Source: Isurus oxyrinchus
Taxonomy: Eukaryota
DNA length: 64,000 nt
Direction: 5' to 3'
Assembly: GCA_026770705.1 (NCBI GenBank)
Contig: JANJGN010000052.1
Span: 3,658,001 to 3,722,000 of the forward strand
Within the stretch, counting starts at the first letter, position 1, and each line of letters starts with the position of its first letter. Shown one piece after another: positions 37,610-42,763 of this stretch. A model generated the notes under the pieces. It had not been told where the DNA came from. It saw only the letters and a program-made list of their open reading frames with translations, and did not search any database. The position numbers and the translations under genes were made by a program.

Positions 37610-37734
37610 GTAAGTCTGAAGATTTAAATTGATTTTAATATAAACATTTGTTTAGGATTAATTGGACAGTTTTTACAAAGGGCCAGCACAGGCACGATGG
37701 GCTGAGTGGCTCCCTCCTGAGCTGTGAGATTTTA

Positions 37735-38200
37735 AATTCTTTCATCGAATGTGACTGTCACTGGCGTGGCCAATACTAATTGCCCATTCCCTAAATGCCC
37801 CTTGAGAATGAGGTGGTGAGCTGCCTTCTTGACCCACTGCAGTCCATGTGGTGTAGGTACACCCACAGTGCTGTTAGAGAGGGAGCTCCAGGATTTTGAC
37901 CCAGCGACAGTGAAGGAACGGTGATATATTTCCAAGTCAGGATGGTGAGTGACTTGGAGGGGAACTTCCAGGTGGTGGTGTTCCCATGTATCTGCTGCCC
38001 TTGTCCTTCTAGATGGTAGAGGTCGCGGGTTTGGAAGGTGCTGTTGAAGGAGCCTTGCTGAGTTGCTGCAGTGCATCTTGTAGATGGTACACACACTGCT
38101 GCCACTGTGTGTTCGTGGTGGAGGGAGTGAATGTTTAATGTGGGGGATGGGGTGTGGATCAGTCGGGCTGCTTTGTCCTGGATGGTGTCAAGCTTCTTGA
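37735..38200 (-). mobile_element. LINE 3' fragment (duplicated at 40340-40805)
   Basis: 'CTIYKMHCSNSARLLQQHLPNPRPLP' family, same as 44600-45055. Confidence 0.8.
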
Positions 38201-38332
38201 TTCTGTGCTTTGTGCAGAAGTGATTTAAAGAGACAGTCCAGTCATTGGTGTAAGGTTACAGTGGGCACTGTGTCTGTGCTGCACTGACTCTCTGCTATGT
38301 GATAACCACAGTGTGATATTGTGTTATTGCAG

Positions 38333-38414
38333 GAGAAAGACAGCGATGGAGGAGAGAGTTTCAGGGACCAGTGACATTGCATTGACCCCCAGTCCACTCT
38401 CTGTGAAACACCAG
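38333..38414 (+). CDS. Gene E cytoplasmic linker exon, copy a: RKTAMEERVSGTSDIALTPSPLSVKHQ
   Basis: 82 bp, phase 2/0; fits between the TM and terminal exons. Confidence 0.85.
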
Positions 38415-39532
38415 GTACAGGAACTGTTTACACTCACTCCAAAGCTTCAATCTCAGTGTGTAGACAACACATGTCCCAGATTCCCAGCCAGGTTACCCAC
38501 TGATTTGTACCTGTGGAGTCAGCAATGGTTCAGTATCATGCTGTCTCTCTGTTATGACACAGCAACTGGTAAAGGCTGTTGTTTAAAATCCCAGAGGGAA
38601 ACTTTAAACAACTGTCATAACCTATATTTCCCAGTGGAATGTTTGAGATGCATCTCTAAATTCAGGAATAAGACCACCAGTTCTCGAGATGGGTTTATAT
38701 CAAACTAAATGAGACATGTATTAATTTACACAAGTTAAACATATGCACATGGCTACAAACTAGTATTATCATAACTTTTTAACAAATTCTCAAACTAATC
38801 TCCTCTAAGACAACCCATAGTCTTTAAGCAGATTCCAGGCATTTTCACCTCACAAATTCCAGTCTCTCTCTCTATCTCAAACTCCCTTTCTTTCTCTCTC
38901 TTTCTCTCTCTCTCATCCTCTCTCTGATTACAAGGTTCATGTTATTGAGCTTCACACCAGAAACTTGAGTGAAGAATCCAAGCCGTCACTCACCAGAGCC
39001 ATTACCGAGGGAGTGCGAGACTGACAGCGGGTCAGTACTGAGGGAGTGCTGCACAGTCGGAGGGTCAGTACTGAGGGAGAGTTACACCGTCGGAGGGTCA
39101 GTACTGAGGAAGCGCTGTACTGTCGGAGGGTCAGTACTGAGGAAGCGCGGCACTGTCGGAGGGTCAGTACTGAGGGAGCGCTGCACCATCGGAGGGTCAG
39201 TACTGAGGAAGCGCGGCACTGTCGGAGGGTCAGTACTGAGGGAGCGCTGCACTGTCAGAGGGTCAGTACTGAGGTTTTTGCTGCGCTGTCGGAGGGTCAG
39301 TACAGAGGGAGTGTGAGACTGACAGAGGGTCACTATTGAGGATGTGCTGCACTGTTGGAGGGTCAGTCCTGAGGGAGCACTGCACTGCCATAGGTGGTTT
39401 CTTTCATAAGACATGGGAGAGAGAGTTAAACCCACTGAGACACGACTGACATTAACGAAGCTGCACAATAATTTAACCCTATCAGTGCCAGTAAATAATG
39501 TGAGGATGTCTTCTGTTTCCATTTCTCTGTAG

Positions 39533-39781
39533 GGTAAACAGAACGTGCTGATTACTGAGCCCCGGAACACAACCAGAGACACAACTAGCGAGGGGGAGAC
39601 CCCAGCTCCCCGGGGTCTCTCTGAAGGTGCAGTGGGAGGCGATGCTGGACTTGGGAACCCCGACAAACCTGAAGAGTTTCTCTACGCCAATCCCCAAGTT
39701 TTGAGGGTGTCCAGTGGTGATGGGTCTGTCCACAGGGAAGAGGAGACGGAATTAGCACAGATCAGGTTCGAGCATAACTGA
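39533..39781 (+). CDS. Gene E terminal exon, copy a (degenerate motifs FLYANP, TELAQI)
   Basis: ctctgtAG acceptor; 249-bp open frame to TGA; AATAAA at 40314-40319. Confidence 0.8.
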   Translation, partial: GKQNVLITEPRNTTRDTTSEGETPAPRGLSEGAVGGDAGLGNPDKPEEFLYANPQVLRVSSGDGSVHREEETELAQIRFEHN

Positions 39782-39978
39782 ATGAGAAATGGGGAGTGGG
39801 AGTGAGGAGATATGGGTGTGGGGGTAGGGATTGAGATTCCTGGGAACAGGAAACAACCCACTGGGGGAGAGGGGGAGAGAGGGAGGAAGGGATGGAATTG
39901 GGCTGCGGTTGGTGTGGTTTGGAATGAAATGCTTCTCCAGAGAGGACTGGATGCTGAGCCATTGAGGAGTGAGATTCA

Positions 39979-40013
<35 letters not shown>

Positions 40014-40936
40014 TCTCTGTCTCTCTCTTTCTTTCTGTGTCAGTCTCTCATTCTCTATCTCTTGCTCCTCCTTTAAGATGACCGTTAATAACTGACTTTG
40101 TTGACTCAGCTGTTGGTCTCCTGTCCCTAATATCTCCTCATGTGCCTCAGAGTCAGGTGAAATGTGACTAACAATCCCCGGATGAGCCTTGGGACATTTT
40201 GCTACATTGAAGGTGCTATATAAATGCAAGTTGTTGCAGTAACTCTGATCTGCTTCGATTAACAATGGAACCACAGAGGTTCCTTCGACAGGGCGTGTGT
40301 GCAGCAGGGTCACAATAAATACATTGAGCTGTGAGATTTTTAATTCTTACATCGAATGTGGCTGTCACTGGTGATGTCCACATTGATGCCCATCTCTAAC
40401 TGCCCTTGAGAAGGTGGTGGTGAGCTGCCTTCTTCACCCGCTGCAGTGCATGTGGTGTAGGTACACCCACAGTGCTGTTAGAGAGGGAATTCCAGGATGT
40501 TAACCCAGCGACAGTGAAGGAACGGTGATATATTTCCAAGTCAGGATGGTGAGTGACTTGGAGGGGAACTTCCAGGTGGTGGTGTTCCCATGTGTCTGCT
40601 GTCCTTGTCCTTCTGGATGGTAGAGGTCGCGTATTTGGAAGGTGCTGTTGAAGGAGCCTTGCTGAGTTGCTGCAGTGCATCTTGTAGATGGTACACACAC
40701 TGCTGCCACTGTGTGTTCATGGTGGAGGGAGTGAATGTTTAATGTGGTGGATGTGGTATGGATCAATCGGGCTGCTTTGTCCTGGATGGTGTCGAGCGTC
40801 TTGATTCTGTGCTTTGTGCAGAGATGATTTAAAGAGAGAGTCCAGTCATTGGTGTAAGGTTACAGTGGGCTCTGTGTCTGTGCTGCACTGACTCTCTGCT
40901 ATATGATAACCACAGTGTGATATTTTGTTATTGCAG

Positions 40937-41018
40937 GAGAAAGACAGCGATGGAGGAGAGAGTTTCAGGGACCAGTGACATTGCATTGACCCTCAGTCCA
41001 CTCTCTGTGAAGCACCAG
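40937..41018 (+). CDS. Gene E cytoplasmic linker exon, copy b
   Basis: 82 bp; splice sites intact; one aa difference from copy a. Confidence 0.85.
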
Positions 41019-42514
41019 GTACAGGAGCTGTTTACACTCACTCCAAAGCTTCAATCTCAGTGTGTAGACAACATATGTCCCAGATTCCCAGCCCAGTTAC
41101 CCACTGATTTGTACCTGTGGAGTCAGCAATGGTTCAGTATCATGCTGTCTCTCTGTTATGACACAGCAACTGGTAAAGGCTGTTGCTTAAAATCCCAGAG
41201 GGAAACTTTAAACAGCTGTCGTAACCTGTATTTCCCAGTGGAATGTTTGAGATGCAGCTCTAAATTCAGGAATAAGACCACCAGTTCTCAAGATGATTTT
41301 ATATCAATCTAAATGAGACATTTATTAATTTTCACAAGTTAAACATATGCACATGGCTACAAACTAGTATTATCATAACTTTATAACAAATTCTCAAACT
41401 AATCTCCTCCAAGACAACCCATAGACTTTAAGCAGACACCAGGCAAAGCATTTTCACCTCACAAATTCCAAATGAGGTTCCTTTCACTTTGGTTCCTTTG
41501 CAGACAGGTGAAGGCTTACAGCTGCTTTGATGTTACAAGCCTCTGCTCTGCACACACAAAACTGCTCAAGTTATACCCAGCTCTTGAGTGTGAAGAAGAT
41601 GGAGATTGATGGGCTCTTGATTGGTAAGGGGATCAAAGGTTAGGAGAGAAGGTGGGAGAATGGGGTTTGTGAAACATATCAGCCATGTATGAATGGTGGA
41701 GCAGACTCGATGGACCGAATGGTCTAATTTCTCCTCCTATGTCTTATGGTCTTATGGCTTCTGTTTGAAGGTAAATTCGCAATGTATCATCAGGACCTTT
41801 GAACTCCATCTCTTCCAATAATAAATCCCCTTTCATCGTATCAATTTTATTAGTAATATAAACGTTGCTTGGTTTAAGATTTCACTCTCAGACTTTGAAT
41901 GTTTTATTTAAAAATGCAAATTACCACTTTACCTCTTTGTTTGCATCTCAAAACTACTATACATCAAAGCACACAGACTGGCTGTCTTTAATCCAATTTA
42001 AATACACACAGACACACACACAGACTAAACCTCTGTTTAAAAAGACAGTTTGCATTTATAATACAAACATTAATAGATTAATAACACTCTGTCTCTATCC
42101 CTCCTCTATCTCTCTCTCTCATCCTCTCTCTGATTACAAGGTTCATGTTATTGAGCCTCACACCAGGCACCTGAGTGCAGAATCCAAGCCGTCACTCACC
42201 AGAGCCATTACCGAGGGAGTGCGGGACTGACAGCGGGTCAGTACTGAAGGAGTGCTGCACTGTCGGAGGGTCAGTACTGAGGGAGTGCTGCACTGACAGA
42301 GAGTCAGTACTAAGGGAGCGCTGTCTTGTCGGAGGGTCAGCACTGAGGGAGTGCTGCACTGTTGGAGGGTCAGTACTGAGGGAGTGCTGCACTGCCATAG
42401 GTGGTGCCTTTTATCCGATAGGAGAGAGAGAATTAAACAAGTCTGCACAATAATTTAACCCTTTCAGTGCCAGTAAATGATGTGAGGATGTCTTCTGTTT
42501 CCATTTCTCTGTAG

Positions 42515-42763
42515 GGTAAACAGAACTTGCTGATTACTGAGCCCCGGAACACAACCAGAGATACAACTAGTGAGGGGGAGACCCCAGCTCCCCGGGATCT
42601 CTCTGAAGGTCCAGTAGGAGGCGATGTTGGACATGGGAACCCCAACAAACCCGACGAGCTTCTCTACGCCAACATCAACTTTTCAAAGCTGCCCGGCGGT
42701 GACAGGACTGTGCACAGGAGCGAGGACACGGAATACGCACAGATCAGGTTCCAGAAAAACTGA
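42515..42763 (+). CDS. Gene E terminal exon, copy b with ITIM (LLYANI) and ITSM-like motif (TEYAQI)
   Basis: 249 bp; ELLYANINF...EDTEYAQIRF matches the CD33-family ELHYASLNF...TEYSEV arrangement. Confidence 0.9.
   Translation, partial: GKQNLLITEPRNTTRDTTSEGETPAPRDLSEGPVGGDVGHGNPNKPDELLYANINFSKLPGGDRTVHRSEDTEYAQIRFQKN

What the first reader, a model, noticed from the sequence alone, without database searches (positions are those of the whole stretch)
37719..42763. One receptor, two tandem cytoplasmic cassettes: ITIM/ITSM-dead versus fully inhibitory
After the single TM exon, a block containing the linker exon and terminal exon is tandemly duplicated (junctions ~37719 and ~40326). Both copies keep intact splice sites, the same 82+249-bp lengths and open frames. 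The proximal copy has LLYANINF changed to FLYANPQV and TEYAQI changed to TELAQI (TAC to TTA, two substitutions), and has its own AATAAA at 40314. The first ~95 nt of the two terminal exons differ at only ~4 positions, while the motif-bearing half is heavily changed without stop or frameshift. Inference: alternative last-exon/polyA choice could switch the same ectodomain between a signalling-silent (decoy/adhesion) form and an inhibitory form, loosely like S-/L-MAG.
Basis: partly seen in the sequence, partly recalled or inferred. Interest (0 to 1): 0.85.

Follow-up and report, generated by a model that had tools for sequence, protein, structure and literature searches.

The report
Shark Siglec with duplicated signalling tail
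A shark immune-receptor gene of the Siglec type carries two copies of its inner signalling tail one after the other, and in its closest annotated relative the first copy is mostly spliced in series with, or skipped in favour of, the second inhibitory copy rather than being used as a separate end of the gene.

Summary
Behind the TM exon (37514-37609), a block with an 82-nt linker exon and a 249-nt terminal exon occurs twice: A at 37718-~39815 and B at 40325-~42797.

- Cassette A is not a decayed copy of B. Its 3' half belongs to a distinct tail subtype (LLYANPQVFRVPSGDG..REEETEYAQI) that is the only tail of many lamniform shark Siglec-like proteins. Here dS between A and B is 0.26, against about 0.05 in the introns. 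The 5' 1.9 kb looks homogenised by gene conversion.
- The same A-then-B arrangement exists in the great white shark. Six RefSeq isoforms there join the cassettes in series, through a GT donor 16 nt before A's stop (window 39765|39766). Other isoforms skip A, or splice A out of frame into terminal exon B. None ends at A's own stop.
- RNA contigs were ambiguous. They are compatible with A being an internal exon.

Most likely A is an optional internal module, and the receptor stays inhibitory through B. This is a new variant of a known kind.

The parts
28538..36639 (+). Ectodomain exons of the same Siglec-like gene: V-set exons within 28538-29023 and 31357-31827, C2-type exons within 32509-32961, 34971-35297 and 36268-36639, and a remnant of another C2 exon at 33055-33120.
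   Evidence: Pfam: V-set 1.7e-12 and 7.9e-11, Ig_CD22 9.5e-09 and 8e-08, C2-set_2 1.8e-08, Ig_3 1.5e-12. tblastn of great white proteins gives 88-96% identity for the last two Ig exons.
37514..37609 (+). Single transmembrane exon (RDSSKWTVGLFTTGIMLSVFLAGIFIFICVR). It ends with 2 nt of a split codon and has donor GAGAAA|GTAAGT.
   Evidence: In X1, contigs run from 37610 into AGAAAGACAGCGA, which is the start of the linker exon (table 7).
37718..39815 (+). Proximal duplicated block A. It begins about 19 nt before a TE fragment (37737-38200) and holds linker exon A and terminal exon A.
38333..38414 (+). Linker exon A, 82 nt ((K)RKTAMEERVSGTSDIALTPSPLSVKHQ).
   Evidence: It differs from linker exon B at 2 nt.
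39533..39781 (+). Terminal-type exon A, 249 nt with its stop. It carries FLYANP at 39677-39694 and TELAQI at 39746-39763, and belongs to the 'NPQV' tail subtype.
39764..39771 (+). Candidate internal 5' splice site AG|GTTCGA, with the exon ending at 39765. It leaves 2 nt, the same phase as the TM exon donor, so it is in frame with the acceptor of linker exon B.
   Evidence: One search gives the sequence and phase. Great white, basking shark and paralogue models all join ..AQIR| to the next linker exon. In X1 the depth falls from 40370 to 788 at the bin edge 39763/39764.
39782..40324 (+). 3' flank of cassette A. It is unique within the window and ends with AATAAA at 40314-40319.
   Evidence: In X1 its contigs have depth 160 and 82.5, similar to intron contigs (table 8).
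40325..42797 (+). Distal duplicated block B. It holds the same TE fragment (40344-40804), linker exon B, an intron with an extra insert of about 620 nt (41470-42094), and terminal exon B.
40937..41018 (+). Linker exon B, 82 nt.
42515..42763 (+). Terminal exon B. It carries ITIM LLYANI at 42659-42676 and ITSM TEYAQI at 42728-42745.
   Evidence: Contigs X5 (497 nt) and X7 (358 nt) cover it together with the B 3'UTR. They carry 18 and 39 nt upstream that do not match the intron, so they come from spliced RNA (table 8).
42764..43945 (+). 3'UTR of cassette B, with AATAAA at 43839 and 43921. This is the family-type UTR: a relic of it lies at 20150-20360.

Best explanation
The gene is a CD33-like Siglec of a lamniform shark. 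Its whole cytoplasmic module (linker exon plus terminal exon) was duplicated in tandem before this species and the great white shark separated.

The proximal terminal exon A has become an optional internal exon. A GT donor inside the codons for ..Q-I-R (39765|39766), 16 nt before A's stop, has the same phase as the TM exon donor. It can therefore splice in frame to linker exon B.

The gene can then make three kinds of product:
1. A long tail with module A followed by module B.
2. A short tail with module B only, from TM to linker B, or from linker A to terminal exon B.
3. A minor A-only tail, ended by a frame-shifted splice into terminal exon B or by A's own stop.

Module A belongs to a tail subtype that already lacks a canonical ITIM (Y-A-N-P). 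In this genome it has also lost the distal tyrosine (TEY>TEL). Both main products therefore still signal through the ITIM and ITSM of module B. Module A acts as a 105-residue insert that keeps one YxN tyrosine.

The 5' 1.9 kb of the two blocks was later homogenised by gene conversion. That produces the mosaic pattern: about 5% divergence upstream, then 22% in the motif-bearing half.

Shown here: the anatomy, the subtype membership, and the shared arrangement and isoform set in the related species' annotation. Inferred: use of the internal donor in this species, and the functional role of module A.
For: - Anatomy and phase.
- Mosaic divergence: about 4-5% in the introns. In the terminal exon, codons 1-32 give dS 0.08 and codons 33-82 give dS 0.256 and dN 0.274. 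Neutral decay since one recent duplication cannot explain this.
- A search of 1.84 billion representatives with exon A found lamniform Siglec-like proteins. Their sources are Carcharodon carcharias and Cetorhinus maximus RefSeq.
- Great white 'myelin-associated glycoprotein-like' isoforms X1-X6 (XP_041037215, 216, 217, 218, 220, 221) show serial A+B, B-only via either linker, and a frame-shifted A-only end. The last Ig exons are 88-96% identical to the window.
- Window A pairs with great white cassette 1 (96/91) inside an A-type clade (100/99).
- Four further models at other loci and species use the same ..AQIR|linker join: P0022, P0041, P0001, P0036.
- RNA contigs: TM-to-linker splice in X1; spliced terminal exon B with its UTR in X5 and X7; both junction-bridging contigs; a depth drop within a few nt of 39765; intron-level depth over A's flank in X1.
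Against: - No read or contig shown to me crosses 39765>40937 in this species.
- The donor GTTCGA is weak: it departs from GTRAGT at +3, +4 and +6.
- The RefSeq models are automatic, and I could not inspect their RNA support.
- Contig depths mix many paralogues when laid at 90% likeness. The drop at 39764 could come from paralogue contigs being clipped there.
- In runs X5-X7, A's flank (contig 39851-39968, depth 13) is not far below terminal exon B (depth 36). Some use of A's own 3' end cannot be excluded.
- The V-set exons match another great white gene (P0027) better than P0037, so orthology is not cleanly one-to-one.
Confidence: 0.6

Rival explanations
1. Terminal exon A is used as a true last exon with its own stop (39779-39781) and polyA signal (40314). 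Choice between the A end and the B end switches the receptor between a signalling-silent form and an inhibitory form.
For: - The acceptors of A and B are identical, and A is met first by the splicing machinery.
- An AATAAA lies 533 nt after A's stop.
- In X5, a contig in A's flank (39851-39968, 3 mismatches, depth 13) is within threefold of the terminal exon B contig (depth 36).
- The internal donor is weak.
Against: - None of the six great white isoforms, nor the other tandem models, ends at A's stop.
- In X1, A's flank is at intron level (69-160) and a contig reads through the polyA site into block B (40216-40371).
- A is not simply silenced B.
Confidence: 0.2
2. In this species cassette A is a decaying relic. 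It is skipped, or included only as noise, and all functional protein is TM-linker-terminal exon B.
For: - Both tyrosine motifs are non-canonical, and Y>L needed two substitutions.
- dN/dS between A and B in the motif half is about 1.
- B-only isoforms exist in the great white shark.
Against: - A keeps an open frame of 27 + 82 codons, perfect splice sites and the internal donor.
- Its protein divergence from great white cassette 1 (66/78 identical) is similar to that of B (72/82).
- First cassettes are open in every related model, although models are only built on open frames.
Confidence: 0.17
3. The duplication is an assembly artefact, such as a haplotype or collapsed paralogue placed in tandem.
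For: None specific. The region is rich in repeats.
Against: - The copies differ by about 5% and by indels, and by 22% in the exon half.
- The junction at 40325 is bridged by contigs of independent runs from two organisms.
- The same tandem order is present in great white and basking shark gene models.
Confidence: 0.02

Closest known systems
Great white shark RefSeq gene 'myelin-associated glycoprotein-like', isoforms X1-X6 (XP_041037215-221), with near-copies XP_041037155 and XP_041037134
   Same: It has the same order TM, linker, A-type cassette (EEFLYANPQVLR.SSGDGSVHREEETE.AQIR), linker, B-type cassette with ITIM and ITSM. The last two Ig exons are 88-96% identical, and window A is its sister in the cassette tree.
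   Different: The great white cassette A keeps TEYAQI, whereas the window has TELAQI. The 5' halves of its two cassettes differ more (25/32 identical) than in the window (30/32). The V-set exons are only 64-73% identical. These are automatic models, described in no paper that I found.
Other lamniform tandem-tail models: Carcharodon XP_041037157 and XP_041037065, Cetorhinus XP_078389619
   Same: Two linker plus terminal-exon cassettes are read in series through the same ..AQIR|linker join.
   Different: Both of their cassettes are of the A-type, so neither has a canonical ITIM. They sit at other loci.
FcgammaRIIB1 / FcgammaRIIB2
   Same: An optional cytoplasmic exon is inserted between the membrane and an ITIM that both isoforms keep. 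The insert changes receptor behaviour (membrane retention versus internalisation), not the inhibitory motif (PMC6433993). This is the best functional analogy for the serial A+B tail versus the B-only tail.
   Different: The C1 insert is 19 residues long and is not a duplicate of the signalling module. It is an unrelated family, with no terminal exon converted to an internal one.
CEACAM1-L / CEACAM1-S
   Same: One ectodomain is made with or without ITIMs by alternative splicing of a cytoplasmic exon (PMC2490704).
   Different: There, inclusion or exclusion of a 53-nt exon shifts the frame, and there are no duplicated cassettes. Here only the X3-like product (A donor to terminal exon B acceptor) works through a frame shift.
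   Same: It is a member of the Siglec family with two alternative cytoplasmic tails from one gene (my own knowledge, not checked here).
   Different: MAG uses inclusion of an exon that carries a stop codon. Its tails are unrelated sequences, not duplicates, and MAG has no ITIM/ITSM pair.

Membership tests
Siglec (CD33-related-like) | N-terminal V-set Ig domain of the Siglec/CD22 type | tested here: met
   Pfam V-set 1.7e-12 and 7.9e-11, and Ig_CD22 9.5e-09 and 8e-08, on 28538-29023 and 31357-31827.
Siglec (CD33-related-like) | Conserved arginine of the sialic-acid site on the F strand (..YFFR.E..) | tested here: met
   GPYYFRIEFD and GPYFFRIEFD are read in the two V exons. This is sequence evidence only; binding was not tested.
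Siglec (CD33-related-like) | C2-set Ig domains followed by a single TM segment | tested here: met
   C2-set_2, Ig_3 and Ig_2 hits. The TM exon has a hydrophobic stretch of about 23 residues. No TM predictor was run.
Siglec (CD33-related-like) | Sialic-acid binding | not testable with these tools
   Needs a glycan-binding assay.
ITIM ([SIVL]xYxx[IVL]) | Consensus present in cassette B | tested here: met
   LLYANI at 42659-42676.
ITIM ([SIVL]xYxx[IVL]) | Consensus present in cassette A | tested here: not met
   FLYANP at 39677-39694, with F at -2 and P at +3. P at +3 is shared by the whole A-type subtype.
ITSM (TxYxx[VI]) | Consensus present in cassette B / in cassette A | tested here: inconclusive
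   Met in B: TEYAQI at 42728-42745. Not met in A: TELAQI at 39746-39763. All other A-type cassettes except Cetorhinus P0026 keep the tyrosine. Recruitment of SHP or SAP proteins was not tested.
   A has TGA at 39779 and AATAAA at 40314. B has TGA at 42761 and AATAAA at 43839 and 43921.
   Contigs cannot show RNA ends. In X1, A's flank is at intron-level depth and is read through into block B. No related model ends at A's stop.
   In the great white counterpart, isoforms X1, X2 and X6 contain both cassettes in one reading frame. This was not tested on RNA of the window's own species.
Optional internal cytoplasmic cassette (FcgammaRIIB1/B2-like logic) | A cassette with a usable acceptor and donor, and phase compatible with the flanking exons | tested here: met
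   Acceptor at 38333; internal donor at 39765|39766, which leaves 2 nt like the TM donor; linker B acceptor at 40937.
Optional internal cytoplasmic cassette (FcgammaRIIB1/B2-like logic) | Both inclusion and skipping observed in RNA | tested here: inconclusive
   Seen only as RefSeq isoforms of a related species. The window-species contigs are ambiguous.

The most novel reading that the evidence does not exclude
Lamniform sharks have turned the terminal exon of their CD33-like Siglecs into a stackable module. A latent GT donor just before the stop codon lets duplicated tail cassettes be chained or skipped. One ectodomain could then be given zero, one or two sets of tyrosine motifs of two subtypes (the ITIM-type and the YANP-type) by regulated splicing. 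This would be a combinatorial signalling-tail system conserved across several loci and species. An unchecked first-reader note at another locus of this genome (s1-869587) reports five tandem tail cassettes behind one TM exon.
Probability: 0.3. Interest if true: 0.65.

Novelty: new variant of a known kind. Interest (0 to 1): 0.45.

Why it matters
Inhibitory receptors are usually tuned in two ways: by pairing with activating paralogues, or by small cytoplasmic splice variants such as CEACAM1-L/S and FcgammaRIIB1/B2.

Here a whole signalling module was duplicated inside one gene, and a former last exon was recruited as an internal exon. This is a simple evolutionary route to receptors with longer, multi-motif tails or switchable tails.

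It also shows that shark Siglec-like tails come in two conserved subtypes, and one of them lacks a canonical ITIM. That matters for reading the large and undescribed shark Siglec expansions.

If the isoforms are regulated by cell type, they would give an early-vertebrate example of tail-level control of sialic-acid sensing. If cassette A is only a passenger, the locus is an ordinary product of the birth-and-death dynamics of this gene family.

Tried and rejected
I could not fetch the great white or basking shark loci, so I have no nucleotide check of their internal donor, no cross-species dN/dS and no synteny.
- The search for homologous proteins returned no protein encoded by the window itself, so the annotation of this genome, if any, was not seen.
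- Read laying allowed one call, and only Logan contigs were available. Most joints (232 of 247) and differences (230) were not printed, and at 90% likeness many paralogue contigs were laid. Two printed joints (41019>42519 with ATG between, and 41018>39534 with A between, both in X1) carry extra letters. I read them as transcripts of paralogues, not of this gene. No count of isoforms is possible from these data.
- The idea that the left junction is a transposon edge, with unequal exchange between TE copies, was rejected. The A/B homology starts about 19 nt before the TE fragment. Both copies share the TE's 3' truncation. The only other nearby copy is inverted.
- Simple recent tandem duplication followed by decay of A was rejected, because dS in the exon's 3' half is five times the intron divergence and because of the cassette tree.
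- 'Leftover tail of a recently deleted neighbour' was rejected as a recent event, because the arrangement is shared with another species. An origin by unequal exchange between an A-type and a B-type paralogue long ago remains plausible.
- Pfam finds nothing in the tail exons.
- Literature searches for shark or cartilaginous-fish Siglecs found nothing relevant.
Exons were searched one by one by reference, and the joined step was left out. One early script concatenated exons only to read the frame.

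
Full report
**What is there**

The window is a cluster of Siglec-like immune-receptor genes on the + strand of a shark genome. The gene in question has:
- V-set exons with the Siglec/CD22 signature and the F-strand arginine (28538-29023 and 31357-31827);
- C2-type exons (32509-32961, 34971-35297, 36268-36639);
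- one TM exon (37514-37609).

These rest.

Behind the TM exon, a block with an 82-nt linker exon and a 249-nt terminal exon occurs twice. Block A runs 37718-~39815 and block B runs 40325-~42797.
- equal exon lengths, identical acceptors and donors, and open frames;
- FLYANP and TELAQI in A, against LLYANI and TEYAQI in B;
- TAC>TTA at the distal tyrosine;
- AATAAA at 40314;
- 4 differences in the first 96 nt of the terminal exon, against 34 in the rest.

Contigs from independent runs of two organisms bridge the junction at 40325, so the duplication is not an assembly artefact.

**History of the two copies**

Introns and linker exons differ by about 4-5%. In the terminal exon, codons 1-32 give dS 0.08. 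Codons 33-82 give dS 0.256 and dN 0.274. Homology ends about 35 nt after the stop.

A synonymous divergence five times that of the adjacent intron cannot be decay since one recent duplication. The motif-bearing half of A therefore has an older, separate history.

B's 3'UTR is the family type, with a relic at 20150-20360. A's 3' flank is unique in the window.

The left edge lies about 19 nt before a TE fragment that both copies share, with the same truncation. The TE was therefore copied with the block and did not cause the duplication.

**Relatives**

A search with exon A against 1.84 billion representative proteins gave ten hits, all shark Siglec-like proteins. The closest come from Carcharodon carcharias and Cetorhinus maximus RefSeq. 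Further searches and cluster look-ups showed two conserved tail subtypes in lamniform sharks:
- The B-type..LLYANINFSKLPSGDRTVHRSEDTEYAQIRFQKN, is also found in carpet sharks, catsharks and others, so it is ancestral.
- The A-type, ..LLYANPQVFRVPSGDG.VHREEETEYAQIRFKRN, is the sole tail of many paralogues.

Window A falls inside the A-type clade (100/99). It pairs with the first cassette of a great white gene (96/91). Its motif half is 39/46 identical to that cassette, against 29/50 to window B.

So P at +3 of the first motif is a subtype character. F at -2 is shared with the great white shark. Only Y>L is private to this genome.

**How the cassettes are used in the relative**

The great white gene 'myelin-associated glycoprotein-like' has the same order: TM, linker, A-type cassette, linker, B-type cassette. 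Its last two Ig exons are 88-96% identical to the window's.

Its six RefSeq isoforms are:
- X1, X2 and X6: A and B in series, joined ..TEYAQIR|RKTAMEERV..
- X4: TM to linker B to terminal exon B.
- X5: linker A to terminal exon B.
- X3: the donor in A spliced to the terminal exon B acceptor, out of frame, ending ..AQISVNRTC.

None ends at A's own stop.

The join corresponds to a donor AG|GT inside the codons for I-R, 16 nt before the stop. In the window this is ACAGATCAG|GTTCGAGC, with the exon ending at 39765. It leaves 2 nt, exactly as the TM exon donor does, so splicing to linker exon B (40937) stays in frame. Splicing to terminal exon B (42515) would instead read RVNRTC and stop (and the sequence).

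The same join is used in models at other loci and in the basking shark (P0022, P0041, P0001, P0036).

As far as I know, the NCBI pipeline issues several isoforms only where transcript alignments support them. I could not verify this for these records.

**RNA evidence for the window itself (contigs only)**

- X1 shows the TM exon running into the linker exon.
- X5 and X7 hold spliced contigs of terminal exon B with its UTR. Their differences from the window match great white residues.
- In X1, depth over the coding part of A is tens of thousands, and it falls to 788 in the bin that starts at 39764. A's flank contigs have depth 160 and 82.5, like intron contigs (56-547). One of them reads through the AATAAA into block B.

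This fits an internal exon that ends near 39765. However, depths are sums over many paralogues laid at 90% likeness. The 39765>40937 junction was not among the few joints printed. In X5-X7, A's flank is not far below exon level. I treat the RNA data as compatible with the favoured reading, not decisive.

**Verdict**

The most likely reading (about 0.6) is an old intragenic duplication of the signalling module, in which the proximal terminal exon serves as an optional internal cassette. The receptor stays inhibitory through module B in its main forms. In this species module A is a 105-residue insert that has lost its distal tyrosine and keeps one YxN tyrosine.

The low divergence of the 5' 1.9 kb is best explained by gene conversion in this lineage. 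In the great white shark the same parts of the two cassettes differ more (25/32 identical, against 30/32 here).

The rivals are:
- a decaying, skipped cassette, about 0.17;
- an assembly artefact, about 0.02.

**Comparison with known systems**

The nearest functional analogue is FcgammaRIIB1/B2, an optional cytoplasmic insert upstream of a retained ITIM (PMC6433993). CEACAM1-L/S (PMC2490704) and S-/L-MAG are looser analogues. The architecture is already visible in automatic annotation of two sharks, but I found no paper on it.

**Limits**

Exons were searched singly by reference, and the joined step was left out.
- An unchecked note of this scan (s1-869587) reports five tandem tail cassettes at another locus of this genome. 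It suggests that the phenomenon recurs there.

Noticed in passing
window 20150-20360: A relic of a B-type 3'UTR, 77% identical to 42789-42990. No recognisable terminal coding exon lies in front of it. The upstream Siglec-like unit (V exons 11672 and 15597, C2 16725) seems to have lost its tail.
   Followed up: partly
window 33055-33120: Only the last 22 codons (..YQCVAENEHGAVEGFITITVE) of an 'APQNLS' C2 exon survive in this gene. The great white model has the whole domain.
   Followed up: partly
window 28538-29023 and 31357-31827 (also 11672-12211 and 15597-15890): There are two Siglec-type V-set exons per gene unit, separated by the same transposon-like insert (12343-13292 matches 29155-30104). 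Great white and basking shark models exist with V-V (P0004, P0027) and with a single V.
   Followed up: partly
window 37737-38200, 40344-40804, 1527-1936, 44655-45053(-): Copies of one interspersed repeat. Very high contig depth in all four runs shows a large family.
   Followed up: partly
window 41470-42094: A repeat insert of about 620 nt is present in intron B but not in intron A. It is an insertion after the duplication, or a deletion in A.
   Followed up: no
window 39000-39390, 42206-42400, 10136-10323, 20654-21712, 52543-52895, 54889-54990: A 33-nt minisatellite (GGTCAGTACTGAGGGAG..-type unit) recurs in many introns and spacers of the cluster. Its copy number differs between cassettes A and B.
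   Followed up: no
window 156-560, 1151-1549, 2721-2813: The end of another Siglec-like gene: two 'APQNLS' C2 exons and a TM exon 61% identical to the one at 37515. No ITIM-type tail exon was found behind it by tblastn.
   Followed up: no
related proteins P0026 and P0049 (Cetorhinus maximus): P0026 has a sole A-type tail that also lost the distal tyrosine (TEFTQI). P0049 (1278 aa) reads from one Siglec tail straight into the signal peptide of the next gene, so it is probably a fused gene model.
   Followed up: no
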